A stretch of 64,000 nucleotides of DNA from Oopsacas minuta (GCA_024704765.1 JAKMXF010000318.1:124001-188000), one strand, 5' to 3'. Counted from the stretch's first letter, positions 1-26,295 are shown. Notes: a model not told the origin generated them from the sequence alone. Numbers and translations are program-made.

Positions 1-216
1 CTCTTCTTCAAAACACGAAAACCAGATGACGCAATAGAATCATGTCCTAACTCATATACAACATTAGACACCAATCTAGCTACATACCTTATAAGGCAAG
101 CATTAGGGGGTGATGCTAAAAGCCTATATAATATCCTCAATTTAAGCCCTGGAGTATCTCGAGGCTACAGAGACGATATTTCTGTTACAGTACTGTATTT
201 TAATGAAGAAAAATAA
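1..216 (+). CDS. 3' end of a PP2C-family, pyruvate dehydrogenase phosphatase (PDP1/2)-like gene (5' partial)
   Basis: Frame 1 is open from base 1 to TAA at 214-216 and reads ...DTNLATYLIRQALGGDAKSLYNILNLSPGVSRGYRDDISVTVLYF. This matches the PDP C-terminal pattern N-x-A-T-x-L-I-R-x-A...R-x-Y-R-D-D-I-x-V-x-V. Confidence 0.75.
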   Translation, partial: LFFKTRKPDDAIESCPNSYTTLDTNLATYLIRQALGGDAKSLYNILNLSPGVSRGYRDDISVTVLYFNEEK

Positions 217-1005: not shown

Positions 1006-4000
1006 ATGTATTTCTTATTTATCATTTTCCTGACCCTTCTCATTTCTGGGTTACATGGTGACGTGTACCCTAGTGAAGGTAGTCTAGGAGGTGGGACGAG
1101 GATCACTATTACTGGAGCAGAGTTTAGTACAGATATGTTCAACAGTCCTGGTACTAACACTTCTAATGGTAATATTGTTATAATGGAAAGTAACGATGAA
1201 CTGCCTTTATCCTGTGATTCAATTAATTATCTTTCTAATCCAATTCAGATAGTTTGTGTAACACACAATTCTGGACACAGTAAGTGCTTAGTGTATAGTT
1301 GCAATTTTCCTAATACTCATACAGCTGTAGCCAGATATTCAATGCTACAGTTTGGATATTAGAAAATTGCAAAATTTGCAATCATATATAAAGAAGTATC
1401 TCTTATATGTTTTGTTCTATTTTCTAACACAATTATCTAGGATAATACTAAAGTTACAATACAGAGATTAGGAAGTATGTATGTATACGTAGCTATCAAA
1501 TCGGATGGGTTTCGCTGAAAAACTTTGTAACTTTTATATCCTGTGACGTATGTATTTCTATCTGTTTATGTAGTAAGTGGTGATCACCAGTACAGCATCA
1601 GTGTAACCTCTGACGGAGCTACAGTCCCTGTATCAGGAACATTCACTTACAGAGATGGCCAGACTCCTATTATTACTGACGTCACCCCTCGCTACACGGC
1701 ACCAGGCTATCTTGTGAGTTTGTTTGGAATAATATATACTGACAAGTATATGAATACTAATGAAGAGACAGTTGATGAACATCAGCTGGAACGTGTTCAC
1801 CTTGGTCCTTCTACATGTGATCTATACCCTGATGATAGTCCTGATGAGTTGTACGGATTATCACTGGATGGAGATGATTTAACAACAGGACACTGTACAT
1901 GCAAGCCTCAAACTACTGATATAGGATCTTTCAATGCTAGTATGCTATTCTCTGGACCTAAAGGCAGGACTTTGATCAGTAAAGATGCACTACTTGTTGA
2001 TGCAGAGCTGAATACTTTCTTAGTGCAATACTACCCAGAAATTACAGGTATTACTCCGACAGTTGGTAGTATAGAGGGTAATACTTTGATTACAGTGAGT
2101 GGAAAATCCTTCCATGACATCCAGGATAATGTAAAGGTATTTATTGACCATTCAGAGTGTATGGTTGTTACTAGCAGTATTGATACGATTACATGTTTGA
2201 GCCCTGTTGGTGTAGGTGATAATAGTTTATACACAGGGCAACGGGGTTGGACATTGAACCTCTGGGAGACCACGGTAACCTCTATTGACCTAATAGACAG
2301 TTTAAACATAACTCTAAGTACCGTTTATTTGGTAGAAAATACTGATTCATATCCCAACATTACAGTCAGTCCGTATGTGATTAAATTATCAAGTTTTTTC
2401 ATAGCTCCACAGTCTGGACATTATACACTTACTACGTCATCTGGTAGACTTTATATTAACACTTCGCCTTATCCAGAATTGAATGACCATTTAATTTCTA
2501 TTCACAATGTTAAAATTGTATTGGAAAAAGGCTCGTATTATTATTTGTACGCTCTGGCTGAAAATACGTTACCTATAGTTAGTATTAAAATGGATGAAAC
2601 CGTGTTCGTGAATAGCATTTTGGGCTCTGCTAGCAATGAGCTACAAACTATTATAACTGATAATAATCCTTATGACGAATGGCTACGAGTATCTGTGCTA
2701 GATAGAAATGAAGGTAATGCTTCTATCCAGGAAATACATTTACCTGTAAATGCATTGGATGTTTGTTGTAATATTTCAGAGATTATTACTGTCAATGTCA
2801 CCTGTGAAGAGAATGTAACGGATTGTAATTCCACCATGGACACTTTTAATAATTATACAATATGTCATACGTCATCAATTGATATCATATATCAAGGTAA
2901 CTCTTCTACTTTTCTAATCAACAGCACTGAAGAGTTAATTAGAGATGAATTAAATTCTGCCAATTTCGCGATTTCCAATGCTGGAGGCGTTAATGTTAGT
3001 CTGATACAGAATAACACACATGTATCGATAATATTTTATTTCAGGGAGATAGGAAAGAGAGATACAATGGAGTTCAATTTATTACAAGCTAATTGTATGA
3101 ATAATGATACTTCTAGTGAGGCAATTACTGTATCAGTAATTTCACCAGGTCTTGATCCAGATAACACCTTTATCTTCATATATAATAACGTTAGATCAAA
3201 GCCTATTCCTTTCACAGCTGGTGAACAGCTGATTAAAACATATGTTGAAGATATGTTCATTAGGAAATGTGTGTATCCTAGAGGAGGGAAGTATTTACTG
3301 CAGGATTTTGAAGATGGTATAGGTTATATATCTGGTACACGTACAGGGACTTATGAACCGTTCTGTGGCAAGAGAGCTTTAAAAAACCCGAGATATCTGT
3401 TCAGAGTAAATCAAACTTATGCCAAGTCAAATGATGGTGACCCAGAACAATTAGATGAGTTTGATGCGAGAGTTTATAAGTATGTTTGTCTTGCTTATAG
3501 TGGGAATTTCCCTTCTAAAATGTATTTTGGCGTACGATGGCAAAATCTCAATCAAGATAGTATTTACAGTCATATTTCGATTGATTTGACTGTGTTTTCT
3601 GATAGCCCTTCAGAATTGATATTCAGATGTCAAAATATATTCGCTCAATTGTTATTAAATGAGGTTTTCGCAGATATATCTGATTCATCTGGTTACTCTA
3701 TTACTTATATACGTATATACCCAGGGAATAATGTTATCTATGTTGATGAAGTTGTTTTCTCTGAAAACTACTATTATTTACAAAGAGATGAAGCTAGGCC
3801 AGCTCGTCCTAGTGGAAACATATTTGTAGATACTACAGTTGTAGAAAATCTAATCCCGATGACTGAAAATGATTCTCTCAGTTTTGATTTACTATTCTCT
3901 ACATTTGAATGCGGACATAACTTCACATTGATTGAGGTGGCATACGAAGAATTTAACTCTCCAATAACTCAGTTTAATATCACTCGTATTCAACAGGCAT

Positions 4001-7000
4001 CACCACCTATACGTGGTTCTTTTACATTATCACAGAACGGTATATTAACACCAGAAATAGATGTACAAGCTACAGAAGATAATCTTAAACAGAGCCTTGA
4101 ATCGACGTTCGATGACGGAGAAATTCGAATTCATCGTGCTGGAGATTGTAGAGGATATGCATGGGATGTTGAATGGATACAATCAGGGGGAAATAAGCAA
4201 ATGATGGAAGTTAATGATGACAATGTTAGAGAATTTGGTGATGTATCAATTACCGTTGAAACTAAAAAGGATGGGTATCTGTACTTGACACATTTACCAG
4301 GTGACATGTTACGCAATACTCACGCGATTCCGCAGATATCTGTACTAGTGAACAACATACCAGCTTATTGTCCTATAGGAAACTGTGACTACCAATACAC
4401 TACAGACTCCACACCAATGATAACCAATGTCTCCCCTAACACTGGTTCTAATGGTACTGCAATTATGATCACCGGTACGATGTTTGGTACACAACCTGAA
4501 GGAGTATATGTATTAATTGGTGGTGATAACTGTAACCATGTGGATCTAGTATCTGGTACCAAAATATCATGTGTTCTACCCAGACATCAATGTGGTATTC
4601 TCCCGCTTAAAATCAATATTCCTATGTTAGGATTTTCCACTACACTTTCATTTGAATACACAATGACTGTTATTAGTTCTATTCCATCACAACTAAGCAC
4701 TACAGGAGGTACAGGGCTAATTATTAACGGGTATGACTTTGGAGATTCTATAACAGATACCTTAGTTACGATATCTTCAAAGGAATGTGTTGTTAATTAT
4801 ATAAATGACACGTATATCCAGTGTACTTCACCTGCGAATCCAGTTGGTTCATATTCCATTGTGTTGACTATACGAAATGTAACAGATGACAGTTTACAGG
4901 CGGAATACGTAGTAATGCTTTCACCTGTTATAACCAGCGTAGAGCCCAATACATTAAGTGCATGTGGTGATGAAATTACCATATTAGGTAATAACTTTGG
5001 CACTGAACTAAACTATATACAGATAATGGTAGGAGATATTGGCTGTGTAGATATTTCATTACAAAGTGATACACAAATGGTTTGTATTACACCACCACGT
5101 GAACCTGGTATGGCAATACTTACAGTTACACATTATTATACAGGTTCTGGTACATTCAATATTACGTATGTGTTAGTTATTGATAGCTTGACACCTTGGG
5201 TGGGGTCCTCATTGGGCGGGTCTATCCTCACATTCACTGGGCAAGGCTTTTGTTCATCTATTGATGACGTAATGGTTACGTTTTCAGATCCACGAGTTGA
5301 TTCATGCAATCCTCTATACGTGAATGACACTTACATACAGTGTAGAATATCCTCAACTTCTATACAGCATCTCATAGATAACACAGGTTATAGCAGTTTA
5401 TATGGTTATGGATACAATTGGAGTCCTAACAATATTACGATACAAAGTGGTGATACGGTTGTATGGAGCTGGAATGGTGCACAATTTATTGAATACCAAG
5501 TTGTACAAACGTATGAAAATGGTAGTGATTATATTGATGGGTTTATGAGTGAGATAAGCTCTGTAGGTACATTTTCTCATTGCTTCTATACTCCAGGAGT
5601 TTTCTATTACAGAAGTATAGAGCCTAGCATGATTGGAGTAATTTATATTACTGAATTGCCTTCTTTTATACCAGAATTTGAATTTACTGTTCATGGATTT
5701 TCTCCTTCAGCAGTTCCTTCCATACCTCAAAATTTGACATCTGTCATGATTAATAGTAATTGTACAGCTTCATTGCCTTCTATTGTCAATGACGCTGATC
5801 TACAGTTCATTTTCTGGAGCTGTAACACTGGGTTCATACGCTATGCAACTCCTTTACAGAGTTATTGGGAGGACTTAATACAAATCATAGGTGATAACTT
5901 TATGGATACACTACTGGAAATTTTGCTTGATGACGTATACCCCTGTGATGTAATCGATTTTAATAATACAGTAGCACAATGTAGGTTGAGACAAGATGCA
6001 CAAGTTCCATCTTGTATTACACTCCCTATAACTGTATCTTATGGTGCTTATGGTTATGCCTTACTTGCAGAGAAGAGTACTTATACACTTAAACCAACAA
6101 TTAGCAATATTTCTCCGTTATTAGGCTCTACTGAAGGTTGTCAGGAAATTACTATTTCTGGTTACGGTCTGAATAACGTAACTAGAGTATATATAAGTAA
6201 TGAATGCAAAATTGTTAGTAGAACTTACTATCAAATCGTGTGTATAACTAGTAGAACTAATGCTAGTAGTTATCCTATTATTATACAGACTTGTTTTGGG
6301 AATGAAACTTATACACATGAGTATGAATATTCAGTATCTAGTACACCGCAAGTTAACCAAATCTCCGTTACAGAGAGTGAGAACTATGCAGTGGTTGCCA
6401 TCTCAGGGAATTCATTCAACACAGTACAGCCAAATGACGTCATGATAGATATTGGAGGCATATCGTGTGTTGATATAATGTTCACTAATTCTGGTAATAC
6501 AATTGAATGTAAAGCTACACTGGCTGTAGGAGATTATTCAGTGTATGTAGCTGTACGTGAATTAGGTTGTGCTTCTATACCTAATAGTATTAATACTGTG
6601 ACCATCCATGGTGAAATCACGAGCTTTTCACCAACAGGAGGTAGCATAGAAGGTTGTACACGTCTCACTATATATGGATACGGATTTTCCTCTGGCTCAA
6701 CTGTAAATATGAATCCTAATATTGTCTGTGATGTAACTGCAATAACTTTCAATCAAATAAATTGTACTACTAGAAGCTCTAATTCAGGCACTAAGATACT
6801 GTCAGTACAGGGAAATGGAAGGACAATTACTTCTAGTACTAGTTTTGATTATTCTCAATCTTTTACTCCTACAATTACAAACATATCTCCTGATAATGGC
6901 CATGGGGGTGATATTGGTATTATCGGCTCTAACTTTGGTACAAGTATCTCAAGTGTGACAGTAAATATTGGTACAACTAATTGTATTATTTCAAGCATAA

Positions 7001-10000
7001 CCGAAACACATATTATGTGTCAACTGCCCTCTACATTGTCTGCTGGTACATACACGCCTCTAGTTACACGCTACAATTACGGGTGTTCTCAATCTAATAC
7101 AGTTTACGAATATACTCTCACAGTTGATGACGTAATGTTTGATAGCGCTATTCCAGGTAGAAACATACAGCTAACGGGATATGGATTTGATATCTTAGCT
7201 ACTGTAGTCACTATATGTGATTTACCGTGTTCCATATACAATTATACGTATTCATTATTACAATGTCGTGCACCGCCGAATCTAGATTATAACGACAAAA
7301 CTTGTAATATTATTATTGAGCATAACTCCCAGTCAGTTGCATTGGTTGATTCGTTTCATTACGTTACAGCACTGACGTCACAGGTTACAGCTGTTACTCC
7401 TTTTAGAGGAGGTACTGGAGGAGGTGTTGAGTTGATAATAATCGGTGAAGGATTCGGTACTGACCCAGACAGAATTATTGTGCTACTAGGTGACCTGTAT
7501 TGTGACGTAGTAAATGCTACTGATACAGAAATACGATGTATTACTCCCGTTAGCAGTAATACTATTATTGTACAAGTCGAAGTACATGTTGATGAGGAAG
7601 GTTACGCAAATTCAAGTGTTTATTTTCAATTTATTGACGTGTGGTCTTCTATTTATACTTGGGGCGGTGAGAGTACTCCTGTAGAAGGAGATTTCGTGGT
7701 TATCAGCCAGAATCAAACTATACTGCTTGATGTTACAACTCCTATTCTCTCATTCCTTCTCATACAAGGGAAATTGATTTTTGATGAAGTTGATCTTACT
7801 TTAAATACTGAATACATTTTAATCACAGATGGAGGTGTGTTGCAAGTTGGAAGTGAGGAAGAGTATTTTAAACATAAAGCTGTTGTTAGGATCCATGGCC
7901 ACGCTAGGAAACCAGAGTTACCTGTATATGGTGCTAAAGTGCTAGCTGTTAGAGATGGTACACTAGAATTACATGGTAAACCTATACCCATCACATGGAG
8001 TAGATTGAATAGCACCGCTAATATTAATGATACTGAGATTGTTGTAGAAGGTGAATTAGAATGCTGGGAAGTAGGCCATGAGATTATCATAGCTACAACT
8101 GGGTTTGGTCCTGTTGGCAATGAGAGAGTAGTAATAACTCATGTCAATATAACTGATGGTATAACTGTTCTAGGTATTGATCCACCATTACAGCATGAAC
8201 ATCTAAGTTTAACTATGTCAAATGGGAGAGAGGATTTACAATTGAAAGCTGAAGTTGGATTACTGACAAGGAATATCGTGTTTGAAGGCTCTGTTAATGA
8301 CGAATGGACTGAAGAAATACCAGCTTGTCCGCGTGATTTTGATCATGATCAGCATGCAACACAGACATGCTTCCAGGGCAGATTTGGTGAAGAGATTGGT
8401 AGCGATCAATTTGGTGCACACATCATGATACATTCCCATACACACCTAGCCCAAGCACGTATTGCGTATGTAGAAGTACGTCATGCTGGACAAGCATTTA
8501 GACTAGGTCGCTATCCAATACATTATCATATCAACGGTAATGTATCACACTCTTACGTCAGAGGTTGTGCTATACATGATACATTCAATCGTGCTGTCAC
8601 CATACACGCTGTACATAATCTATTAGTCGAGCATAATGTTGCTTACAATATAAAAGGGCATGCTTTCTTCCTGGAAGATGGTATTGAAACAGAGAATATT
8701 ATACAGCACAATTTAGCTGTGTTCGTCAGGTCATCTAGTAGCTTGTTAAATGTTGATGTTACCCCCGCGGCATATTGGATAACTAATCCGAATAATATTG
8801 TGTCATATAACGCAGCTGCTGGAGGCACTACATTCGGTTATTGGGTGCGGTTATCTGCACATCCAGAGGGGCCCAGTTTTGATCCTGACATATGTCCACG
8901 TAACGTTAGAGTACTAGAATTCACTGGTAATACTGCACATTCTTTTGGTCGCTATGGACTATGGATATTTCCAACTTACACACCCAAGCTACACGGTACT
9001 TGTGACTCAAATGTACCAGCTGTTGCTCTCTTCTCAGATTTCCTATCTTGGCATAACATGCGTGGAGCTGAGTCTACAGAAACTGGTGCAGTTCATTGGA
9101 GGAACTTTAATATGATTAGCAATGAGTTAGCTGGTATGGAAGTGACTATACCTAGTATTTGGCATACTTATGATACAGACGGTGGGCTTGTATATGATAG
9201 TTATGTAGCAGCTAGAATACCAGGAATTGAGGATAATTTCTGTTGCGTAGCTGGTATCAAAACTGGTCACAATTTGGGCTCTACATTTCGCAATATAACC
9301 TTTGCATATTTTGATCAGTCAAGTTGTAGTGCAATAGCTGGTTGTTCTCACTGTAAGGCAAGGCAAGGAGGATGGGAAGTTAGATGGTCAGAAGTTGAAT
9401 TTATCGCTTCTCCTTCTAAGCTAGCTTTTCTATGGGAGCACGAGACGGTACATGCAGATTTAGACGGGTCTATTACTGGACAGAACGGAACCTCTTATAT
9501 TGTACCGAGTATGGGTACCTTACCTGTTGATAAATGTACTATTGATGTATTTGCACTTTCAAAAGGTGATAATAATGGCAGTTATTGCTGGGACACTACG
9601 TTCAGGAGGATGGCTTGGAATAAACCTAAGCCAGAATCCCTGCTCTATGTAAATGCATTAGTTTCTAATAAATACGGAGCAAGTGTGATTCCTTTCAAGT
9701 TTAAGCGGTTAACACATCCTGATGGTTGGATGGCATTAATATTAGTGAATGAAGTGAATACGATAGCATTTGAAAATGTTTCACATGTAACGAATATTAG
9801 CTATGTAGCAGGCTTCTTTGAAATTAGGCCACAGGAAGATTTATGGATTAGACACAGTTTTGTACAAGCTCCGGATTTTCTGAGAATATTTGAAGATCAA
9901 GAAATGGCAGAAACTGATTATATACCACACAGACCTAATGTAACTCATGGTGATTGGCATTTTAACCATTCTTCATTAGATTTGTATTACATAGTCACAG

Positions 10001-13000
10001 GAATTGATTTAGTTACTCCAAGCAACTTGGCTACTGAATTATCAGTTTATCAGTGTTATTTCGCTGATTGCGTCATTCCAGTTCCCCCACCCCCACCCAC
10101 CGGGAGGCCACATGACTACAGACGTTGGAGTAATGCTACCGCTTGGATAGACTCAGAGTATGGAATTGAAGGACCCCCTGCAGATGGTGTTGACGTATTT
10201 ATACCACCTCATTGGTGGATGGTGATTGATATGCCGCTACCGGAAATTCGTAATTTAACCATACAAGGGGTGTTGGAGTTCGAGGATTATATTGACTATA
10301 CTTTGAACGTGACTTATATCGTAATTCTAGGTGAAAATGCTGGACTTTTCGCCGGTTTAAATGAGTCATTCACACACAATATTCATATAAGATTGAAAGG
10401 TGATCATAACACACCTGAATTAGTATACCCAGGTGCTCCTATTATCGGTTCTAAGGTCATTGCTAATTTTGGCATTTTACAGTTATGGGGTGTTGTCCCT
10501 GAAATTTCGTGGACGTTTGCCCGCTCAACTATCCATAAGAATACATTAACAATTATCCTCTCGGAGATTGTTGATTGGGGAATACATTTGGATATTCTCA
10601 TTACGTCATCATCATTTGATCACTACCAAACAGAAGTAGCTACTATACACTACATAGAAACAAAGAATAATGTATCATATATTTACGTTGAAGAACTAAT
10701 TCAATATACACATCATGTGGTTACAGGGTATACTGATAATGGTCTTGAGTATACGTTACGACCGGAAGTAGCTCTGTTACATCGTAATATTATCATTGAA
10801 GGCGTAGATGAACCTGTTGGCAGCGTTTCTATTAGGGATTTCGGAGCACGAGTATTAGCAAGTACAATCGAAATTGAGGATAAAACTCATGTTGCTAGAA
10901 CATTTCTTGAAGGGGTGAGGTTCTACCACGCGGGACAATACGGACATACAGATTCATATGACCCTAGATACTCTCTGGCATTTGTTAACTTAGGTACACC
11001 ACAAAAAAATTCATCATACATCCATTCGTGTGTATTTGATGATTCGAGGAGCACTGCTATTGGGGTTTTCAACTCCCATAACATTGAGATTATTGATAAT
11101 GTTATCTACGGTAGTGTAGGTGATTCTGTGATAATAGCTGGGGATAACATTGATATTGTACACAATCTAGTTGTACAAACTAAATTCCCTGTATACTTCT
11201 TAACTACTGTTACTTCAGGCTTACTCCCTCATGTAACTACTTTTGAGTTAACTAAAGCGAATGCTTTGAAACTTCAACGAAATTCTGCTGCTGGCTCTGA
11301 TTACATAGGATTCCATATTAATGGAGAACATTGTAATGAAATTGATCAGGACAGACAATGGTATGGGAATATAGCTCATTCTAATCTACACGGTATTCAT
11401 ATGTTATACGATGACGGTATTCCTTTCTGCACAAAAGTTTCTAATTTTATGGCATACCTAAACTGGGATTGGGGTGTCTTTACGTACACGAGGCAGCGTA
11501 TGGTGTTCAAGAACCTTATTCTTGTTGATAATCGCATTGGTTTACATGCTATAGTGTATGAGCCTAGAGCATTAGCGCATACTACTTCTAACAAATACAT
11601 TAGCGTGGATGACTGTTTGTTCATTGGTAATTCTGATGTTGAAAATTGTCGTAGTAATTTGTCTGAGCCGAGACATCTGTCACGGACAGGAAAGTGGAGG
11701 TCTTCGGCATCTGTTGACGGTGGGAATGTGGGGTTCACTTTGGCTACCTTCATGTCTGGAAAGGGTGCCGCTCCTAATAAACCATATGACAAGCTACTCA
11801 GTTATTCTACTATAAGTGGTCTTACACGTTTCAACCAGGTCACTTTTGCTAACTATCTAACTAGCTGTGGAGATAGAGCTATACAATCTCATCGTGCATC
11901 AGGTGATGCTATGCATCCTGTGGAAATACGGAATAGCCATAGATTTAATGTAGATCAAAATGCTACGTACTTTTTGTATAGACCTTTACTTAGCTGGGTT
12001 GATCCTTCTGATTGTGTTGATATGGATTGTGATGGACCTAAAAAAGTGTTGATTAAAATGTTGGATAATTCCTTCCTGGGGGAAATAAGCGAGGTGGTGG
12101 CACAATCTGAGTTTGAATGGGATGGAGACATGCGGAGGGGTCTAGGAGATTATCGTATTCCAATTTCAATGCAGACGAACAGTGATGGTAGCAGAGTTGA
12201 TATACTAAGTACATACCCATATAAGGGCATTTATCGTGATCAAGATTGTGTGTATAAAAAGGAATGGCAATCGTATTTGTGTCCCGGTACGAATCATGAT
12301 ATGATGATTATAGAGAGTTTAGATGCTGACACAGAGACTAGAAGGATTTCTCCTGTGGGTTTAGCTTCTGGGGAATTCATTGATCTTATTAATGGACCCA
12401 TGGACCATGGCTGGTGTCTCGGATACACATGTCAAGAACGTATATCTACTTTCTACACGATTGTACGAAACAGTTTGAACTATTCATTAGCTTTCACGGG
12501 CACGAATCCACAAGTACTTCGTGTGTTCTTATTAAATGTTGACGTCACTCGAGCAATTGTCGTTGGCTTATTCTACCCAAGCCCTCAACGTCTAGATGTG
12601 TATAACGAGGGTCGTTTCATTATACCAACAAACGCATATTTTATGGATGCGAACCTTAAATATGCTGATACACGCGATCCAGACATAAAAGCTCAATACG
12701 TACCGACTATAGATCTTCATCCAGGAGCTAATTTCTTTGACAGAGATAGTCTTACGATGTATTTTGTAGTGAAAGGCGATGCTAAAATTCAATTAGAGAC
12801 TACTATGATTATTCATTTGAGATTTGATCTAGCTTCTATTACTGTAGATGAATTCTTTGAAGAGAATATTGTGAATAATATCGCGCTTCTTCTCAACATT
12901 CCACCGTCCAGGATCCGTATCACTAAGATAGTCGGAATTCCAACGATAACTCGGCGACAAGTACAGTCAGTAGCAAATAATGTCTCACTTGAAATCGAGA

Positions 13001-13050
13001 TTGGTGATCCTCCTATGAACATTACAAGCTCTCTACCAAATGATAACTAT
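1006..13050 (+). other. PKHD1L1: Fibrocystin-L (PKHD1L1)-like region: IPT/TIG repeats, PA14-like segment, cupredoxin-like segment, two G8 domains with beta-helix repeats
   Basis: Repeated P-x-I-x-x-I-x-P-x-x-G-S-x-x-G-G-T-x-I-T-I-x-G IPT motifs. G8 domains start at WSSIYTWGG (~7640) and RRWSNATAW (~10120). Family-typical strings include GQAFRLGRYPIHYH, FLEDGIE, DCVDMDCDGPKK, GPMDHGWCLGYTCQER and DEFFEENIVNNIALLLNIP. Confidence 0.9.
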
Positions 13051-16000: not shown

Positions 16001-19000
16001 TTTGAATGGGGAATTACGTTATGAGATCCTACAAACTTTTCCAACTGATAATAATATAACATACTTGGAAATTAATCCCGATACTGGAGTTATTCATCTC
16101 AATCATTCACTCGATCTTGACTCGGTTGCTGTCCCTATTGAAACTATAGTATTGTCAATTATTGTCACAGATAAAGGTACTCCATCGCTCTATAATAGCA
16201 CAACTCTTACGATCTTTATTGAACAAGTTGATGAATTTATACCCGAATTCGTTCACGGAGATATTTCAGTAAATATTTTTGAAAATCAACCTCTATCACA
16301 AGTACTATTCAATGCAAATGCGACTGATTCGGACCATGGATTGGGAGGAGAATTCGAATATGAAAAGAGAAATGGGTTGGGTTTTCTTTCAGTATTTAAC
16401 CTTGATACATTAACTGGTGCTGTAACTTCTACTATACAATTCGATAGGGAAACTAAAGATTCATACTCTTTTACATTAGCTGTACAAACTAGGTCAAATA
16501 ATCCTGTTACGAGATCATCTACTATTGAGGTATTTATAACTATTCTAGATGTTAATGATAACTTCCCAGTGTTCCAGGAAACTCTATATACAATATACAT
16601 CACTGAGAATACTATGGTTAATTCTGATATCTATCAAATAACCGCTACTGATAGAGATATTAATCTTAATGCTAATCTACAATACGAATTATACCATGAA
16701 AATTCTCCTGATGTATTCCTGATTGATATGCTGACAGGTGCCATCAGTTTGACACTTGATCTTAATCTAGAAGCTCCCGCGGTTGTTCTACCGTCAGCTG
16801 AGACTTTTAACTTAACAATAACCGCATTTGACAGGAGTGAGAGCCCACTATTCACGAATACCACGATTTTAGTAGTTATCACAGGTGTAAATGAATTCTC
16901 ACCCATTTTTGCAAATACACCAGATCAGCTGTTTCCAGAAGACACTCCTACAATTGCTCTATTCACTGTATCAGCTACTGACCAAGATTACGGACCTCAA
17001 GGTGTTATAACATATAGTATAATAGCTGGTAATAATGAAGGTAAATTTGGTATCTCATCTAGCAATGGGGAAGTAAGGTTGGTCGAGGAATTAGATCGGG
17101 AAACGGTTGATAATTATAATCTTGAAATTCTGGCCCTGGATAATGATGCTGATATTTCTTCACGTAGAAATGATACAATTCGTATTGGAATTACTTTAGA
17201 AGATGTGAATGATAATAGACCGATCATACAACAAACTAGCTGTATATTGTCTATACCAGAGAATACTGTAGTTGGATCTAACTTGTTTAATATATCAGCA
17301 ACAGATGATGACATCACAATTAACTCAGAAATAGAATACCTCTTGACATATCCTGAATTTTCTATTGATTCAAACACGGGGGTTGTTGAGCTATCATCTC
17401 CAGTTGACTATGAATCTGTAGAATCTCATATTATATACCTAAGTGCGAAAGATAAAGGTTCCCCAAGTCTAACCTCTGAAGTACTAACCTGCTTCATTTC
17501 TATAACTGGTTTCAATGAATATGAACCTCAATTCCAACAAAATAACTACACATTTGCTTTCGAAGAGAATTCACCTATTAACACAATGATAGGGCTTGTA
17601 GAAGCTACTGATGCAGATAATGGTATTGATGGTCTAATTACATATAGTGTAGTTGAAGTTGATAGTCGTTTTAGAGTTGATGATAACGGTGGAGTGATAG
17701 TTTTCGGTTTTTTCGATCGTGAGGTTGACGTATCCCCTATTTTAATAACAATTTCCGCAGTAGATGCACCTGGAGGTCCTATACGCTACACAGCATACAC
17801 TAATGTCTCAATTACCATACTGGATATTAATGATAATTTTCCAATATTCACTACTAATCATCAATACGAATCTCTCCCTGAGAATACACCAGTTACTACA
17901 AGCATAGCCCAGTTCACTGCTACTGATATAGACATAGGTCTCAATAGCCAGATTCGTTATTATATTCCCCCGGGTGATTTTGCTGTTGACCCCCTATCTG
18001 GAGTCGTGTCAGTACACAATTTCTTAGACAGAGAAATGAATGCTTATTATACAATACAAATATCAGCTGTTGATCAGGGCTTTCCAGGTAATACTGCTTT
18101 AGCTATTCTTGTTGTTAATATTGATGACGTCAATGATAATCCTCCTATATTCACTGAATATAATTACACGGTAATTGTGGAAGAAGATACACCAGTTAGT
18201 TCTATTATCTTGACTGTACAGGCTGTTGATATAGATTTTGGTTCCAATAGTGTGGTTATGTATTCTATAGTGTCTCAATCAGCTGATTATTTTGAAGTAG
18301 AATCAAGTATTGGCGCTATTACACTCAAAAGGACATTAACTGGAGCTGATGATATGTATAATATAACTGTAAGAGCTACAGATCTCGGTTTAATGCCATT
18401 ATCATCAACAGCTGATATTATGGTATACATCACACCCACTAATAAATACCCTCCTGTATTTACCTCACCTGATAACTATACTGTATATATTCAAGAGAAT
18501 ATACTGTATTCTGATACTATCTTATCTGTAACAGCTGTTGATCTAGATGAAGGCATCCTCGGACAAGTTGAATATTCTATTCTAACTGATTACACATTTC
18601 TACATATTAATACGAATAATGGTAGTATTACGCTATTGAGTGCGTTAGATAGTGAGTTGTATAGAGATGGTATTATATTTCAAGTTCAAGCTAATGATCT
18701 AGCAGCTGCTGAATATCGCAAGTATTCACTCGCTAATGTAATTCTTATCGTTTTAGATGTAAATGATAATTCCCCATACTTTCCTCATACACATTATTCT
18801 ATCTTAATACCATCTGATCTCGGTTATAGTGATGTCATCTATTTATCTGCTATAGATAGAGATATTGGGATTAATTCTGAGTTTACCTATAGTTTGTCTG
18901 GAGATGTTTGCTATTTCTATACAGACACCATGGATGGAGGCGTGTTTTATAACGGACAAATACTCCAAGTTAACCAGGAGTATCATCTAGTTTTGACTGC

Positions 19001-22000
19001 TACAGATCATGGTAGCCCTTCACTCTCAAATAAGACTGATGTTACTATTAAAGTCTTACAGAGTAATTACTATTCTCCTATTTTCATAGCTCCACCAGGA
19101 CGAATTTATATTCCAGAAGATTTGGGTGTAGCTGAACTTGTCTATCAATTTGAAACATTTGACTTTGACATTGGAGACTCTGCTATTATTGAGTACTACA
19201 TTTCAACAGGGAATACTCATGAAGTATTCGATATTTCTAATGATGGAGCTTTGTTCCTCAAAACTTCACTCGATTTTGAAGAAATGAACTTATATACTTT
19301 GACTATTCTAGCATATAACCCAGGTAATCTATTCGAATACAGATATTCTGATATTTCTGTTGATATTATCATTGAAGATATTAACGATATTATTCCTGAA
19401 TTTTCTCTCACTAATTATACATTTATATTCGCTTCAAATTTCCAATCAGGTAATCCAATTGGTACAGTTTTTATTATTGATGACGTAATAAGATCAACTA
19501 GCCTTTCTCCTTATACAATTATATCTGATCCATTTATTTTCACAATCTCTGAGGATGGTGTTATCAGATTAACAGAAGACTTTGGGCTGAATTTTGTTAG
19601 TGAATATTCTATAGAAATATCGTATAATGATGGGATATATACTGCTACAGCTTTAGTGACGATTTTTGTAGAAGAACCTAATTTGTACTCTCCATTATTC
19701 TCCAATTCAAACGGTTCATTTAACATTCTAGAGAATAATTATTTTACTGATGTATTACTGATAACAGCAACTGATAATGATATAGGAGCTAATGCAGAAA
19801 TTTCTTATACTATTACAGATAATTATTATATCTCTATTGATCAAAGTAGTGGTGTTCTAACCCTTGTTAATTTATTTGATTATGAACAGATACAAATATT
19901 GAGTTTGGTGATAACTGCGGAAGATAACGCTTCACCCTGGCAACGAAAATCCACTACATTTCCTGTTGAAATAGTAGTTTTAGACGAGAACGATTCTCCA
20001 GCTATTTTCGCAGAACCTACCTACATATTTACAGTAGAAAATAATACAATTGTTGCTGGTATTATTGGTAGAATAATTGCAACTGATGCGGATATATCCT
20101 CAACTCTTTTATACCAATTCACCACGACTAGTGATTACTTCGATATAGACCCATTCACTGGAGATATATTTGTAGCAAAGGAATTGGTTATTCAGAGTCC
20201 AACTATTACTGTATCAGTAAACGACTCTATACACACAGATAGTGCAATCGTGATTATTAACATCATTCCAGCCAATTTACATACCCCAATATTTCCCCAA
20301 CATAATTACACTGTATCTATACCAGAAGGAACTTCAATTGGAAATTCTATTCTACAAACAAATGCTGTTGATATGGATACTGGTATCAATGGGGATATTA
20401 CATACAGTATTTCGTATAATCTAACGGGTGAATTATTGTATAGTGAATTCTACTACGGGTATGATTGTATTAACTCAGTCATTAGATGCTGAAACAGATC
20501 CAGCAGAAATTTCGTTTGACATAACAGCAACAGATAATGCTTATTCTTCTTTCCGTAAATCTAGCTCTGTAACTGTTATTATACAAATTGAAAATGTGAA
20601 CGATAGATCACCAGAATTTTCACATCCTATTTATCAGCTGTTTGTAGAAGATGGCACTGATAGATACGTGAATATTTACAAGGTTGAAGCTATTGATAAA
20701 GACGGAGATACTCTATCGTACACGATATTATCCGGTGATATTGACCAAGTTTTTAGTATCAACTCTATTACTGGAATACTCTTCCTGAATACAGTACCAT
20801 ATGCTGACGTTAATCCCTTATACAACCTGAGGATACAGGCTTCTGATCTTGGAGGTAATTTCGCTATTGCATCATTTGAAATACGTATTATCCCTAGGAA
20901 CATGCAAGCACCTGAATTCTCTGAACAAATTTACTATTTTGAGCATTTCCATGTTGTTAATATTGGTGGAGTTATTGGTCGTATTTCTGCAACAGATTTA
21001 GACACAGGGAATGAAGGCAGTGTATCTTATAGTATAATCTCTCAATCAAGTGATGCATTCGTTCTGAATCATATCACAGGTGTGATACAGCTGTTTAGAT
21101 CAGCTGATTATAATAATTATACTATTCTAGCTCAGGCGTGTGATAATGCTGTTTCTACATACAAATTGTGTACCAATACGACAGTTCAAATAGAAATACA
21201 ACAAATAGAAGATGAGTATGTTATTCAGCCTGTTAGTCTATCTCATACGTTTGAATTAACTGATATTAACCAAAATATTTCATTTAACGCTTTTCAAATC
21301 AGTCTTAATTCCTCGATTTTATACACAGAAAATATCGACATAGAACTTCTAACTTGTGTTTCAAATTTGATGTTCGACTACCGACTTAGTTTCCCATTTA
21401 TTGAAGTTATATTAATCCAAACTGACGTCATAACAGATCCCTTACAAACCCAGCTAAGAGTAATTATCAATAATTCTACGTTTTCAATCACTACAATCAA
21501 CCTATTGCCTCAACATAACATCACTATACCTACATTTTCAGATGATACTTACTACATTCACGTATCACATAATCACCAAGTTGGAAGTCTCGTATCTATG
21601 GTAACTTTGGATTTCCCACCTTTTGAGAGAGTATTATATCAACTTGCTAGTGGTAACGAAGATTCAGTATTCTCAATAGATTCTGATACAGGTAGTATAT
21701 ATCTGTATGCAGAATTATCAGATACACACCCTCTATACACACTCTCACTCGTAGCTAGATTATTCTACGTCACGAACTCTCCTATATTTGTTGAAGTTAA
21801 AACTACACTGTATATAATAGTACAAGAGATAATATCTAACATAATACAGCCTTCATTATCATTACCATATTTTAATCCGATTGTTACATATCCTAACAAC
21901 GTGTGGAGCATAAATGGAACGTTTGAATTCATTGGAGATACGTTTAACTTGGAATTATTAAGATTTCCTAATGAACTGAACCAGATACAGGTTTCTTTTG

Positions 22001-25000
22001 GTAATGTTAATATCTCAATTGATTCAGGCATTTATTATGATGTATACTACTCTCATCTACCTAACACTCATATCTGGTCTAATCAACCCATATTTCAACT
22101 GATAATATTTAAGTTTAACGCTCTTGTCGTCGACGAAACAAGTATAACTCTACACATATTCTCTCAAACTTATACATCACCATTTATTGATGGAATTTCT
22201 TCATTCATGATCGACATCCCTGGTTCTGAATTTGATATTATGAACGGTGATGTTGAAGTTCCATTTATTGTTAATTCATTCAACGGAATAATTACTTTAA
22301 CACTCTCTAAAGTTAATGAATACACACAGCCAAATTTATATATCCAACTTCCTTCTAATACCGCATATTCTACTGATAAGTTTGCGCTACCTCTATATAC
22401 AAGGAATTTCATATCACCCCTAACTACCTTTGAAATACTATTTGACATTTCAAATAGTTTGAATTTTATTTCATTCACTCCAGCTCCTGACTGGACTGTA
22501 TTCTCAAAAGCTGATACAAGCACTGTATTATTATATGGTGTAAATGACGTCATCCTCAATTCATCATTTACTACCAGCACTGATCTTATAGGACACTTTG
22601 TGTTAGAACAAACTCAAGGGGTAACACATGCATCTGCCACATTAACTACTGATATCAAACTTCTCACAAATACTGTAGGGGTAATTAGTGATGGAATCGG
22701 TTATGCAGATTTTATCTACACTGATGTTCTATCTAGAATTGCTACTTTATCTTTAAAACCTGATTCAACAGAGAAATTATTCTCGTTTATTCATCAGAAA
22801 GATGTTCTAGAAATTTCTAATATCCTACAAGATACCTCATCCATAATTGATCTAGGAATAACTGCTATTGCTATTTCTTTCTCTGGGAAAGTAGATCGAT
22901 TAGACAATACTCAAATACAATGCTCAATTATCTCAGAAAATTTATATTTCATAAATTCTACTTGTAATGAGCTACACATTGGGAGTGCGAATTTCGCAGA
23001 ACACTTAGAGATCACCATAACGTATGATAACATAATAGACACTCAGTATGTCGATGTATGGGCTATTCAACAAATCAGTATAATCACAGATTCTAATGTT
23101 CTGAATCCTATTTCTTCGTGGTTGAATCACAATTGTGAACAAATATACGAATGGACAAAATTCACTATACAAAGTATTATTGTTAATAAGAATTCAGAAT
23201 CCAGAATAATTGAAATTACCAAACAATTGATTGAATACTTACTCTATAACCATCAAGTTATTTCAATCATTCCATTCGATCCTAGTTTCTATTTACAGCC
23301 AAAGAATCCGACACTACAGCATACTACAGTCAGTGTAACCTTAGATGTACAAGTAGATTCTATTTCTATGGTTCCCTTATTGTTAATATTCTCAAATGAG
23401 TATTCTTATATAACTGGGGTATCTTCTTTGATTGTTTCAGATATAAACTATTCAATAAATAGCAGTGAGGAAAATATTGATAATTTAAGTTTAACTGTTG
23501 ATTCAACTCTTACACACAATCATAGGGTAGGTTCTCTTCAAAGCTCTGTTATACTTGATAATTCTACGTTTATTGATTATATTTTCGGCCCTGAATACCT
23601 TCATGTTATTCCAGTGGATCCTTCCAAGTTATCTGTTAACAGGGATATGCTACCTGAAATTAGTTCGTATCTTCATTTCACTTCGATTTCCTCCGATGTT
23701 TTATTGGTTCTCAGTAACATAGGAGCTTGTGGAGGGAATGTGCTTTATTCCACAAATAAACAGGTTGATATTATCCAAACTCTTCCCTCTTCTGTGCGGA
23801 TAGAAGTAGGCCATACACGTTTATCCTTATTTAACTCTCTGACTAACTTGCCATCTACAACTACGATTCATTTATTAGGTACTTTCCCTCAGCTAATACA
23901 GTCTTATATTGATATTACTGCTGTCAATGTCATTCATAATGATATCCAGATAAACTCTGTCAATTCTCAAATTCATTTGAAAATCATTGATCAGGATTTA
24001 TTGATTATACCAAATATAATTGATGGAAGTATTAGCGTTAGCGGCTCTAATACATTTGGTAATGTAGCGGTAGAAATATACGTAGATACAGAATTATTAG
24101 ATTCTCTTCTTATTAGTGTTGTGTATGAGTCCACGCTTGAGATTGTAGCTATTTCGACCTATACTGGAGATATATTGCAATACTTGCCTAAAATCGGTTC
24201 AACTACTTTTGAACCTTTCTATGTTAGAGGGATTTTAAGATTTGAAGATGATTCAGTTTTGTATGTAACTTTAGATAGTTATGACATCTTGTCAGATAGT
24301 AATTCTCTTCTTTGTGATTCACAAAATATATGTACTCTAACCATGGATGACATTTCTAACTATATTACTATTACAGGGAGTTATCGTACTCTATCTGCTA
24401 GCTATAATCTAAACTTGATTCCTTCTCCTGTCATTAAATCGCTGCAAATACAATTCTATGACAATAATGATATTCCTATCAATAACGTGTTTTATGGAGA
24501 GGAAGGGAGTTACTTCTATATTTCCTTAGTATTCTGTTTCCAAGGTTTATCAGGTACTTATCATTTGAATTCTAATAATCTATCGTATTTCTCAGAATCT
24601 CTGACTATATCTAGTAGTGATATAGCTGTTATTTCACAGAATAACAGCACTATATTACTTGATGGGGGTTGTAATAGTGTATTAGTTACCATTAACTTCT
24701 TCTCTAACGTTTCTACACATACGTTTGTATGTAATTATCTTCCATCAGCTGGGTATCCACATCTTGGTCATATTGTCGGTGCTTCCCTGGATAAGCCAAT
24801 TTCTTCTCTGTATACTATACCTTTATACTTCCATTTTGAAGATGAACAATCTATTGCTTTTGATATTTTAATTCAATTCAACACTGATGAATTGACTTTT
24901 TCACATTTAACAAAGTCTATGGATTTCTCTATTAGCAATCCCACCCCATATGGAGATGTGTTTTTACTCAATTCATTGACTAATTCATCACTACACATTG

Positions 25001-26295
25001 GAGTATTATCAAATTCTGCGATTCAATCAGGCTATATTAAAATAGCAGATCTCTCATTCAACCTAGCATCTACACTAATTATTCCCTCCATTAGTATTCA
25101 GTCTCATTCTTTAGTTAAACTGGATGACGTCATACAGACAGATAGTACTAATCTTATTGGAGATATAAACAGTGATAATGAGATAGACATAGGAGATTTG
25201 TTGATTTTATCTCATAATATATCTGAACATCACCTTACTGGCGACAACATAGAGTTAAATATGAATGACGTCACTGCAGATGGTGTGGTTAACTTCGAAG
25301 ATTTTCGTCGATTATTTTCCTCGCATTTCGGTGTTTTACCTTTACCAGTTTTATATGAAACCTTCAATTCCACTAACGCATGCCATCTCTCTATCAGAGT
25401 TGAGTTATCAGACATACAACACTCTCCTTACACACAATTCGATACAGTTAAAGTATATATGGGATTATTCACTACATCTGATCTATCTGATTACACTAAT
25501 TGGGAATTGAGTATAGGTTCATTCGTATCTCAAACTTATACTGGTGGAATCAGCTTAATTGTATTTGAAGCGAGTCCTGAATCAAATACATCTCTCTATA
25601 CCGTCAGTACTGATCTATTTCTCCCGATTTCTATCACTACACAAGTATTTATCTACTTACGTTCCTCACGGTCTCTTCCTCCTATTTCCAGCTTATTTTC
25701 TATACAAGATCATAGTAGTTATTCAGAACCTATATCTACTGGTGGTATTACTTTATTGACACCAGATGGTGATCTACTGCCTCTCCCATCCAAGCTACAC
25801 GGTTTAGACACTATACGTGATGAGTGTAGTAGTGATCCTACTGTATCACCTATAGTAAGGATACTTCTAATTGCAGGGACACCTTCATTAGCCTTCATTA
25901 TCATTATTCTAATTATCGTATTTACGATATTACTTATCGTTTGTTTGGTTTATAAGAAGAAGAATGTAGCCAAAGTGAAGATACAAAATATAGAGGATGC
26001 GGAGAAAGAGACCTTACGTGAGTCGGTTGATTCTGAACATCAGTTATACCGTGGTTTGACCTATTACCCTGATCCGTCAGAGGCACACGCTCTCTCTCGT
26101 TCACCTTCTTCTTTTAAGAACACTACATACGAGAATCCTGTTGGTATATCAGGGCATTTCCTGTCTGATCCTGATGATACTGCTTCTGGTGAGTATATAG
26201 ACGGTAGTCTGAATATATCTCATAAAGTTAGCTCTACTTCTGGAGTACATCCTCTGATACAGGAATCTCTGCCTGGTACACCTAAAAAGAACTAA
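1006..26295 (+). CDS. Giant type I membrane protein (~8,290 aa): fibrocystin-L ectodomain + 4 Ig-like repeats + ~20-22 cadherin repeats + cohesin/TMEM132-like region + dockerin + TM + short tail
   Basis: Exon model 1006-1279, 1574-15640, 15754-26295. Intron 1280-1573 is GTAAGT..ATGTAG. Intron 15641-15753 is GTAAGT..TTTTAG and restores the cadherin motif ITG|RLDYE. The signal peptide is MYFLFIIFLTLLISGLHG. Joining the ORFs needs removal of 1 nt near 20430; the total is then 24,882 nt = 8,293 aa + stop. There is a single TM (ILLIAG...IVCLVYKKK) near 25860-25960. Confidence 0.8.
14750..21820 (+). other. Cadherin repeat array (~20 clear repeats plus ~2 degenerate)
   Basis: Recurrent PE/xE, A-x-D-x-D, LDRE/LDYE and D-x-N-D-N-x-P-x-F motifs at ~105-110 aa spacing across ORFs 1543, 15819 and 20428. 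Confidence 0.95.
24750..25335 (+). other. Cohesin-like domain followed immediately by a type I dockerin-like domain
   Basis: The dockerin shows two duplicated Ca-binding loops, GDINSDNEIDIGD and NDVTADGVVNFED, each followed by a helix (25153-25335). The preceding beta-rich segment (YTIPLYFHF...FDILIQFNTDELTF...KIADLSF) fits a cohesin fold. An earlier cohesin-like segment lies at ~22320-22700. Confidence 0.7.

What the first reader, a model, noticed from the sequence alone, without database searches (positions are those of the whole stretch)
1006..26295. ~8,290-aa fibrocystin-L / cadherin / cohesin-dockerin fusion receptor encoded in three exons
Seen in sequence: a near-complete PKHD1L1-like ectodomain runs in one open frame into cadherin repeats. 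A clean 113-nt intron continues the cadherin array (ITG|RLDYE). After ~20-22 repeats come cohesin-like, TMEM132-like (VDVWAIQQISIITDSNVLNPISSW...CEQIYEW) and dockerin segments, one TM and a ~110-aa tail. Established: PKHD1L1-type proteins normally reach their own TM shortly after the beta-helix region; cadherins with cohesin domains (coherins) are known from sponges and choanoflagellates; TMEM132 combines cohesin and Ig domains. Inference: I know of no described protein joining a fibrocystin head to a coherin/TMEM132 stalk. It would be a very long tether, roughly 100 nm from the cadherin repeats alone, that could act as a surface-coat or inter-microvillar link.
Basis: partly seen in the sequence, partly recalled or inferred. 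Interest (0 to 1): 0.9.

Follow-up and report, generated by a model that had tools for sequence, protein, structure and literature searches.

The report
Giant sponge fibrocystin-L–cadherin surface protein
This is one real gene for an 8,290-residue membrane protein that puts a fibrocystin-L (PKHD1L1-like) head on a stalk of about 22 cadherin repeats, a TMEM132-type cassette and a cohesin-dockerin pair; sea anemone and jellyfish genes share the same head-plus-cadherin design, so it is an old, little-noticed form of the family and not unique to this genome.

Summary
Window 1006-26295 (+) encodes one 8,290-aa type I membrane protein. It has a signal peptide and a fibrocystin-L head (at least 12 TIG, 2 G8, 2 beta-helix modules). 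The head runs in one open frame into about 22 cadherin repeats. A TMEM132-type cassette, a cohesin-like module, a dockerin, one TM and a 114-aa tail follow.

Two corrections:
- There is an extra intron at 1280-1573.
- The "third exon" boundary near 20,430 is not an intron. The assembly carries 10 letters (20421-20430) that every read contig covering the site lacks. Without them the frame is intact and matches five relatives without a gap.

An RNA contig confirms the 113-nt intron.

The uniqueness claim fails in part. Nematostella "fibrocystin-L isoform X2" aligns in one stretch through the head and its cadherin repeats. It and a Sanderia jellyfish protein also carry a membrane-proximal cohesin-like/dockerin-like pair.

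What I found only in this clade (probably glass sponges, from other agents' notes, untested) is the 22-repeat array, the TMEM132 cassette and a tail without MYND.

I found no paper describing the fusion. Function, as a surface coat or microvillar tether, is inferred. The scan had already noted the frame break and the cohesin-dockerin pair on this same window.

The parts
1006..1279 (+). Exon 1: start codon, signal peptide (MYFLFIIFLTLLISGLHG) and the start of the first TIG domain. Another in-frame ATG lies 33 nt upstream.
   Evidence: Translation. Pfam TIG E 3.8e-6. The same exon is present in relative L001.
1280..1573 (+).
   Evidence: Stops in all frames here. The join gives VTHNSGH-I-SGDHQY. 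L001 is split at the same place.
1574..15640 (+). Exon 2, 14,067 nt in one open frame: the fibrocystin-L head, a linker, and cadherin repeats 1-2 with the start of repeat 3.
1006..14040 (+). Fibrocystin-L (PKHD1L1-like) head, model residues 1-4247. It holds the TIG array, G8-1 (about 7657-8010), beta-helix 1 (about 8407-8961), G8-2 (about 10171-10518), beta-helix 2 (from about 11005), and a C-terminal part that Pfam does not name.
   Evidence: Pfam. One BLAST stretch against sea-cucumber fibrocystin-L-like P0019, model 23-4247 = 32-4285, 35% identity.
14041..14808 (+). Linker between head and cadherins, model residues 4248-4503. It includes a second copy of the last head module (model 4262-4467 resembles P0019 4069-4271).
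   Evidence: No Pfam match (protein 7).
14809..21831 (+). Cadherin array of about 22 repeats, model residues 4504-6803. Canonical DxNDNxP linkers alternate with non-canonical xNEFxP linkers in repeats 1-14. The last repeats are degenerate.
   Evidence: Pfam Cadherin in 3+7+7+4 stretches. Self-HMM finds 21 repeats plus a gap. Linker motifs.
15641..15753 (+). Intron 2, 113 nt, GT..AG, phase 1, inside cadherin repeat 3.
   Evidence: A spliced contig of 3,682 nt in run X1 bridges 15638|15752. The same donor codon is used in L001, where the intron is about 260 nt.
20421..20430 (+). Ten letters (CTAACGGGTG) present in this assembly only. They break the frame inside cadherin repeat 18.
   Evidence: Left out by all contigs of X1, X2 and X3 that cover the site. 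Their removal gives a gap-free alignment to five orthologues. No run was listed for the 60-nt stretch that contains them, though that search had only 2 sampled words.
22189..23568 (+). TMEM132-type cassette (cohesin-like domain plus three Ig-like domains), model residues about 6923-7382. It includes the VDVWAIQQ...CEQIYEW motif.
   Evidence: Exhaustive profile search. Pfam on its hits P0128 and P0129 finds TMEM132 3rd-6th domains. hhalign gives 94.2%, E 1.1e-7, 445 columns. A weak direct Pfam hit to Ig_TMEM132_4th, E 0.04.
23569..24789 (+). Beta-rich region of about 400 aa with no assigned family, conserved in the orthologues.
   Evidence: Alignment. All-beta secondary structure in low-confidence models. 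No Pfam match.
24790..25122 (+). Cohesin-like module, model residues about 7790-7900. The boundaries were set by eye.
   Evidence: Foldseek hits to cellulosomal cohesins 1anu, 1ohz_A and 5nrk_A at probability 1.00, TM by target 0.5-0.6, on a low-confidence model. ESM Atlas top clusters carry Cohesin and Dockerin_1, scores 0.90-0.93.
25159..25314 (+). Dockerin type I module with two Ca-binding loops (DINSDNEIDIGD and DVTADGVVNFED).
   Evidence: Pfam Dockerin_1 at 32.6 bits, cutoff 22.9. The three orthologues scanned pass the cutoff too. The best PDB sequence hits are cellulosomal dockerins, 2y3n_B at E 7.4e-5.
25315..25887 (+). Post-dockerin beta domain and juxtamembrane stalk.
   Evidence: Conserved in the orthologues. 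A comparable segment follows the dockerin-like module in the cnidarian proteins.
25888..25950 (+). The only transmembrane helix (LAFIIIILIIVFTILLIVCLV).
   Evidence: Hydropathy scan of the whole model. The orthologues P0121 and P0125 have one at the same place.
25951..26295 (+). Cytoplasmic tail of 114 aa plus the stop codon. Conserved motifs are YRGLTYYPDPSE and the C-terminal ESLPGTPKK. There is no MYND finger.
   Evidence: Alignment of six sequences. Pfam finds nothing here.

Best explanation
Shown: window 1006-26295 is a single, expressed, three-exon gene for an 8,290-aa type I membrane protein. From the outside in, it has:
- a full fibrocystin-L (PKHD1L1-like) head;
- a stalk of about 22 cadherin repeats;
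- a TMEM132-type cassette (cohesin-like domain plus three Ig-like domains), as in coherin, hedgling and lefftyrin cadherins;
- further beta domains;
- a cohesin-like module followed directly by a dockerin;
- one TM helix and a short conserved tail.

The frame break in the assembly is a 10-letter insertion that the reads do not carry.

The head-cadherin-cohesin-dockerin-TM order is shared with cnidarian fibrocystin-L genes. It is therefore an old form of the family. Echinoderm-type fibrocystin-L, where the TM sits about 130 aa after the head, looks like a shortened version.

Inferred mechanism: in Ca-rich sea water the cadherin array forms a long, partly stiff rod, about 100 nm from the repeats alone. 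It holds the fibrocystin head far from the membrane. At the base, the dockerin of one molecule binds the cohesin of a neighbour, tying molecules side by side into a coat or link layer. This would parallel the stereocilia coat formed by vertebrate PKHD1L1. The tail's YRGL and YYPDP motifs would serve sorting or anchoring.
For: One gene:
- A 14-kb open frame crosses the head-cadherin junction.
- An RNA contig of run X1 runs from about 13.65 kb through the spliced intron to 17,444.
- The reads restore the frame at 20421.
- Five orthologues have an unbroken exon 3 of 3,516-3,551 aa. In L001 exon 1, exon 2 and exon 3 lie in the same order with the same splice codon.

Domains:
- Pfam.
- Cadherin self-HMM.
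- TMEM132 cassette.
- Dockerin.
- Cohesin.
- One TM.

Old architecture:
- Nematostella P0007 aligns in one stretch, model 122-5268 = 2-5187, 34% identity.
- Sanderia P0008 aligns model 2840-5047.
- All three cnidarian sequences have Dockerin_1 as their best or only Pfam lead at the equivalent place, and Sanderia also has Cohesin.
- The alternation of DxNDNxP and xNEFxP linkers occurs in both the sponge and Nematostella.

Coat analogy: PKHD1L1 is a stereocilia coat protein (PMC6707252, title and abstract).
Against: - No expression site, localisation or binding data exist, so the function is analogy only.
- The runs' kinds are not on record. Three of the four keep the intron, so I cannot tell whether the 10-letter difference is an assembly error or an allele.
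- The structure models of the stalk were poor (mean pLDDT 38 and 50). The cohesin call therefore rests on a weak model plus language-model features, and Pfam's Cohesin model does not hit the sponge protein.
- The cnidarian dockerin and cohesin matches are below Pfam's cutoffs, and hhalign gave only 4% probability for that region as a whole.
- The cohesin-dockerin linker is only about 15 residues, and the pair may bind other partners or nothing.
- Half of the cadherin linkers lack the Ca-binding motif, so the rod may be flexible.
Confidence: 0.8

Rival explanations
1. The gene is a pseudogene in this genome. The 10-letter insertion at 20421-20430 is real, so the protein ends in cadherin repeat 18, without stalk base or membrane anchor.
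For: The window as assembled has the frame break, with a stop at 20490-20492. Logan contigs drop rare variants, so the reads cannot prove the insertion is absent (caveat).
Against: - Every contig covering the site in three runs lacks the 10 letters.
- No run was listed for the stretch that contains them.
- The 5.9 kb downstream of the break remain fully open and 47-61% identical to the orthologues, including the tail motifs.
- Another agent's note reports an assembly error elsewhere in this genome (not checked here).
Confidence: 0.08
2. The locus also or mainly yields separate products. These could be a secreted or shed fibrocystin head and a cadherin/TMEM132-type membrane protein, made by internal promoters, alternative polyadenylation or proteolysis. 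The giant fusion would then not be the working form.
For: Coherin-type cadherins with the TMEM132 cassette exist on their own, for example P0055 and P0120. Fibrocystin-L exists on its own in echinoderms. Contigs cannot prove full-length transcripts (caveat).
Against: - There is no stop, no start context and no intron at the head-cadherin junction.
- The junction is conserved in six relatives and in two cnidarian classes.
- One RNA contig spans from the end of the head into cadherin repeat 8.
Confidence: 0.1
3. It works as an ordinary trans-acting cadherin adhesion or polarity receptor (Fat or CDH23-like) between neighbouring membranes. On this reading the fibrocystin head is a ligand-binding cap and the cohesin-dockerin pair is structural filler.
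For: The cadherin repeats score best against Fat, Dachsous and CELSR-type repeats. Long cadherins form links in other animals (general knowledge).
Against: The tip of the molecule is not a cadherin repeat, so the usual EC1-EC1 or EC1-2 handshake is not available. The tail has no catenin-binding or Fat-type motif that Pfam detects. Both Ca loops of the dockerin are conserved in all six clade sequences, which points to a working module.
Confidence: 0.15

Closest known systems
Nematostella vectensis fibrocystin-L isoforms X1-X3 (XP_048585400-402; automatic RefSeq models), and Sanderia malayensis EukProt models EP00794_P006712 and P009057
   Same: The head (TIG, G8, beta-helix) runs straight into cadherin repeats. 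It aligns collinearly in one stretch through the junction and the first 7 repeats at 34% identity. Canonical and xNEFxP linkers alternate. A cohesin-like plus dockerin-like pair sits near the membrane, and there is one TM.
   Different: The cnidarian proteins have only 5-8 cadherin repeats and no detectable TMEM132 cassette. Nematostella has a tail of about 400 aa ending in a MYND finger, and a SEA-like segment precedes the TM (seen by eye). Their dockerin matches are below Pfam's cutoff.
Bilaterian fibrocystin-L / PKHD1L1, for example Apostichopus japonicus fibrocystin-L-like P0019. Vertebrate PKHD1L1 is the stereocilia coat protein (PMC6707252).
   Same: The whole head aligns: model 23-4247 = 32-4285 at 35% identity. 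It is a type I membrane protein with a single TM.
   Different: In the sea cucumber the TM follows the head within about 130 aa and the tail carries MYND. Here about 3,900 aa of cadherin, TMEM132-type, cohesin and dockerin modules lie between the head and the TM.
[quoted passage not shown] 2012, as cited in PMC6030884)
   Same: Cadherin repeats are followed by the TMEM132-type cassette of a cohesin-like domain plus Ig domains.
   Different: I could not read the defining paper. As far as the TMEM132 paper describes these families, none is reported with a fibrocystin head or a dockerin. P0055 and P0120, which are cadherins with the TMEM132 cassette, have no TIG or G8.
TMEM132 family (PMC6030884)
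   Same: A cassette of a cohesin-like domain plus three Ig-like domains lies proximal to a single TM.
   Different: TMEM132 proteins are about 1,000 aa with no cadherins and no head. [quoted passage not shown]
Bacterial cellulosomal cohesin-dockerin modules
   Same: The dockerin has two Ca-binding loop-helix repeats and passes Pfam Dockerin_1. The cohesin-like beta sandwich matches type I, II and III cohesins by fold.
   Different: This is an animal membrane protein, both modules sit on one chain about 15 residues apart, binding is untested, and no enzymes are attached.

Membership tests
Fibrocystin-L (PKHD1L1) family | N-terminal signal peptide followed by an array of IPT/TIG domains | tested here: met
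   Hydrophobic N-terminus. Pfam TIG in 10 or more stretches.
Fibrocystin-L (PKHD1L1) family | Two G8 domains, each followed by a right-handed beta-helix (PbH1/CEMIP type) | tested here: met
   G8 x2 and CEMIP_beta-hel x2 in the order G8, helix, G8, helix.
Fibrocystin-L (PKHD1L1) family | Collinear full-length similarity of the ectodomain to named members | tested here: met
   Single stretches of 4,409 and 5,331 columns at 34-35% identity to P0019 and P0007.
Fibrocystin-L (PKHD1L1) family | TM helix shortly after the head | tested here: not met
   The TM is at residue 8156, about 3,900 aa after the head ends. The Nematostella protein named fibrocystin-L fails this in the same way.
Fibrocystin-L (PKHD1L1) family | PA14 domain near the N-terminus. 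Pfam PF07691 is listed for the cnidarian and several echinoderm members. | tested here: inconclusive
   There is no PA14 hit in window 1576-3975, but 600 aa there have no Pfam match at all.
Cadherin superfamily | Tandem extracellular cadherin repeats with Ca-binding linker motifs on a membrane protein | tested here: met
   Pfam Cadherin E 1e-159. 21-22 repeats. DxNDNxP at 8 linkers and LDxE at 11 repeats.
Coherin-type cadherins (cadherin plus cohesin/TMEM132 cassette) | Cadherin repeats followed by a cohesin-like domain and three Ig-like (BIG) domains in TMEM132 order | tested here: met
   hhalign 94.2% over the TMEM132 3rd-6th domains of P0128. These were the only non-orthologous hits in 1.84 billion proteins.
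Coherin-type cadherins (cadherin plus cohesin/TMEM132 cassette) | Orthology to the coherins named in Nichols et al. 2012 | not tested
   The paper is not held, and no named coherin sequence was obtained.
TMEM132 family | Conserved N-terminal region (CR) before the cohesin-like domain, and overall TMEM132 length and architecture | tested here: not met
   The cassette is embedded in an 8,290-aa protein. The hhalign match starts just before P0128's cohesin-like domain, and a CR was not looked for.
Dockerin type I | Score above the Pfam gathering cutoff, with two duplicated Ca-binding loops | tested here: met
   32.6 bits against a cutoff of 22.9. The three orthologues scanned score 24.9-30.6 bits. 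Both loops are visible in the alignment. PDB dockerins are the top hits.
Dockerin type I | Ca-dependent binding to a cohesin | not testable with these tools
   Needs a binding assay.
Cohesin domain | Nine-stranded jelly-roll fold matching known cohesins, or a Pfam PF00963 match | tested here: inconclusive
   Foldseek gives probability 1.0 to many cohesins, but E is only 2e-3 to 1e-2 on a model with pLDDT about 55-65 there. Atlas features point to Cohesin clusters. There is no Pfam Cohesin hit in the sponge protein; Sanderia's scores 18.7 bits, below the 24.1 cutoff.

The most novel reading that the evidence does not exclude
The first animals may have had a fibrocystin-L that was itself a giant cadherin. 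It would have self-assembled at the membrane through an in-chain cohesin-dockerin pair, making this a working cohesin-dockerin system in animals. The protein would form the links or coat of collar microvilli. Bilaterian PKHD1L1 (stereocilia coat) would be its truncated descendant. One ancestral molecule would then have united modules now split among three hearing-related protein families: PKHD1L1, tip-link-type cadherins and TMEM132E.
Probability: 0.25. Interest if true: 0.75.

Novelty: new variant of a known kind. Interest (0 to 1): 0.55.

Why it matters
- It shows that fibrocystin-L has a long cadherin-bearing form shared by a sponge clade and two cnidarian classes. This changes what the ancestral protein probably looked like. 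It suggests that the short bilaterian PKHD1L1 lost its stalk.
- It gives a conserved animal example of a dockerin that passes the family threshold, sitting next to a cohesin-like module on the same chain. The TMEM132 literature says vertebrates have no detectable dockerin partner for their cohesin-like domain. This protein offers a direct test of whether cohesin-dockerin binding operates on animal cell surfaces.
- For annotation, it shows that the frame break in this assembly should not be read as a split gene.

Tried and rejected
1. A tiny intron at 20.4 kb. A 16-nt GT..AG piece would restore the frame, but it is too short to be spliced. The reads show a 10-letter difference instead.
2. AlphaFold2 of the stalk in two pieces with six-sequence alignments.
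3. PDB sequence search with the TMEM132-like region found nothing.
4. A word-based search for relatives of the stalk found only the five orthologues.
5. A search from the Nematostella junction region was swamped by Fat-type cadherins and added no taxa.
6. hhalign of the TMEM132-like profile against the Nematostella C-terminal part showed no match, so that cassette is not shared.
7. Recent tandem duplication as the source of the array: no DNA repeats were found in 13-23 kb.
8. Literature: seven full-text searches found no paper on a fibrocystin-cadherin fusion. Nichols 2012 and Peer 2009 are not held.
9. A check for public runs holding the 10-letter form listed none, but only 2 sampled words were available.
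Full report
**What is in the sequence**

The + strand of window 1-26,300 holds three very long open frames: 1531-15648, 15702-20489 and 20425-26292. A short coding piece at 1006-1279 starts with a Met and a signal-peptide-like segment and runs into a TIG domain.

I joined 1006-1279, 1574-15640 and 15754-26295 and left out 20421-20430. This gives an 8,290-codon reading frame without a stop.

**Gene structure**

The closest relative, L001, has the same short first exon and the same split (VTQNSGH | TGDHSY).
- Run X1 holds an assembled 3,682-nt contig that lies on 14700-15638 and 15752-17444 with the intron removed. It reaches about 1 kb upstream of 14,700, into the end of the fibrocystin head.
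- L001 uses the same donor codon (ACAG|GTAAGT) with a 260-nt intron.

**The frame break**

- All contigs of runs X1, X2 and X3 that cover the site leave out 10 letters at 20421.
- Without them the protein reads ITYSISYNNYCIVNSTTGMIVLTQSLDAE, a normal cadherin strand.
- That sequence aligns without a gap to five orthologues whose third exon is unbroken at 3,516-3,551 aa.
- The 5.9 kb after the break are as well conserved as the rest.
- No public run was listed for the 60 letters that contain the insertion, though only two sampled words were available.

I conclude that the break is an assembly error or a rare allele.

The kinds of the four runs are not on record. X1 behaves as RNA because only the spliced form is present. 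X2-X4 keep the intron.

**Domains**

| Part | Model residues | Evidence |
|---|---|---|
| TIG array, G8, beta-helix, G8, beta-helix | about 1-3300 | Pfam |
| Rest of head | to 4247 | One stretch to sea-cucumber fibrocystin-L-like P0019 at 35% identity |
| Linker with a second copy of the last head module | 4248-4503 | |
| Cadherin array, 21 repeats plus one degenerate gap | 4504-6803 | Self-built HMM; Pfam counts |
| TMEM132-type cassette | about 6923-7382 | |
| Unassigned beta-rich region | about 7383-7789 | |
| Cohesin-like module | about 7790-7900 | |
| Dockerin | about 7913-7965 | |
| Post-dockerin beta domain and stalk | to 8155 | |
| TM helix | 8156-8176 | |
| Cytoplasmic tail, 114 aa | 8177-8290 | |

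The cadherin linkers alternate between the canonical DxNDNxP and a non-canonical xNEFxP type through repeats 1-14. No DNA-level repeats remain, so the array is old.

**The stalk base: TMEM132-type cassette**

A profile of residues 6800-7530 from the six clade sequences was run against 1.84 billion representative proteins.

- It found only orthologues and two other proteins, P0128 and P0129.
- Pfam places the TMEM132 third (cohesin-like), fourth, fifth and sixth domains in P0128 and the fourth to sixth domains in P0129.
- hhalign of the profile against P0128 gives 94.2% probability, E 1.1e-7, over 445 columns.

According to PMC6030884, this cassette is what coherin, hedgling and lefftyrin cadherins share with TMEM132.

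**The stalk base: cohesin and dockerin**

Dockerin:
- Pfam Dockerin_1 scores 32.6 bits against a cutoff of 22.9.
- The three orthologues tested also pass.
- Both Ca-binding loops are conserved.
- The best PDB sequence matches are cellulosomal dockerins.

Cohesin-like module, just before the dockerin:
- The AlphaFold model was weak (mean pLDDT 50).
- Foldseek still returned a long list of cellulosomal cohesins at probability 1.0.
- The ESM Atlas feature search gave Cohesin and Dockerin clusters at 0.90-0.93.
- I treat this call as probable, not proven.

A further beta domain, the only TM helix (8156-8176) and a 114-aa tail follow. The tail motifs YRGLTYYPDPSE and ESLPGTPKK are conserved.

**Relatives**

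- Six unnamed proteins from ENA contigs match exon 2 at 63-75% identity with the same Pfam set.
- Five match exon 3.
- In L001 the pieces are adjacent and in order.

Notes from other agents of this scan call the genome a glass sponge, Oopsacas minuta. I did not test that. It fits the low intron count reported for that genome (PMC10280926).

**The fusion is not confined to this clade**

- Nematostella vectensis "fibrocystin-L isoform X2" (XP_048585401, 6,423 aa) aligns in a single stretch, model 122-5268 to 2-5187, at 34% identity. That runs through the head, the junction and seven cadherin repeats.
- Pfam finds 7 cadherin stretches there, and a MYND finger at its end.
- Two models from the jellyfish Sanderia malayensis show G8, beta-helix, five cadherins and a TM.
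- In all three cnidarian sequences the segment before the TM aligns to the sponge cohesin-dockerin region in the same order, with both Ca loops present.
- Dockerin_1 is their best or only Pfam lead (E 0.012-0.017), and Sanderia also shows Cohesin (E 0.002). All of these are below the cutoffs.
- The TMEM132 cassette is not detectable in Nematostella.
- Sea-cucumber fibrocystin-L-like has its TM about 130 aa after the head and a MYND tail.

The simplest reading is an ancient head-cadherin-cohesin-dockerin-TM protein. It was lengthened in this sponge clade (22 repeats, TMEM132 cassette, new tail) and shortened in the echinoderm fibrocystin-L examined here. I did not build a tree, so independent fusions are not excluded.

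**Mechanism (inferred)**

- About 22 cadherin repeats at roughly 4.5 nm each (textbook value) give about 100 nm. The TIG array and the stalk base add more.
- Half of the linkers lack the Ca motif, so the rod is probably jointed.
- The conserved dockerin next to a cohesin-like module suggests Ca-dependent side-by-side coupling of neighbouring molecules near the membrane.
- Vertebrate PKHD1L1 forms the stereocilia coat (PMC6707252). A coat or link role on microvilli is therefore the most natural guess. I give it roughly one chance in three.
- None of this was tested.

**Novelty**

Seven full-text searches found no paper that describes a fibrocystin-cadherin protein. A 2026 review of the fibrocystin family does not mention cadherins at all.

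The Nematostella models are public under the name fibrocystin-L, however.

I rate it a new variant of a known kind, of moderate interest. The scan had already flagged the frame break (s1-242697) and the cohesin-dockerin pair (s1-242625) on this same window.

Noticed in passing
window 17400-19300: Runs X1-X4 hold many alternative contigs 95-99% like the window here. They show dozens of single-base differences and single-base gaps at 17457, 17966, 18327, 18919 and 19081, and the summed depth is raised. The window has no DNA repeat in this region, so these look like haplotypes or pooled individuals rather than paralogues.
   Followed up: partly
window 14809-20000 (cadherin repeats 1-14): Linkers alternate strictly between canonical DxNDNxP and non-canonical xNEFxP/xNxYxP. 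The same alternation appears in the Nematostella protein, which suggests an ancient two-repeat unit and a rod with alternating stiff and Ca-free joints.
   Followed up: partly
window 29015-33703 (+): A single 1,562-aa open frame with Ca-binding EGF domains and a secretin-family 7TM domain: an adhesion-type GPCR immediately downstream.
   Followed up: no
window 35126-39325 (+): A single 1,399-aa open frame with about 28 EGF domains (teneurin/Notch-type EGF). An EGF-laminin G open frame follows at 42445-43395.
   Followed up: no
window 47024-49321 (+): An open frame combining a folate-receptor-like domain and a glucose/sorbosone dehydrogenase beta-propeller, the architecture of hedgehog-interacting-protein-like proteins.
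   Followed up: no
P0007 (Nematostella) and P0019 (sea cucumber) C-termini: Cnidarian and echinoderm fibrocystin-L proteins end in a cytoplasmic MYND zinc finger. The sponge tail has none and carries YRGLTYYPDPSE and ESLPGTPKK instead.
   Followed up: partly
window 973-1005: A second in-frame ATG lies 33 nt upstream of 1006 (MCVILLSQYKS-MYFLF...). L001 starts at the equivalent of 1006.
   Followed up: no
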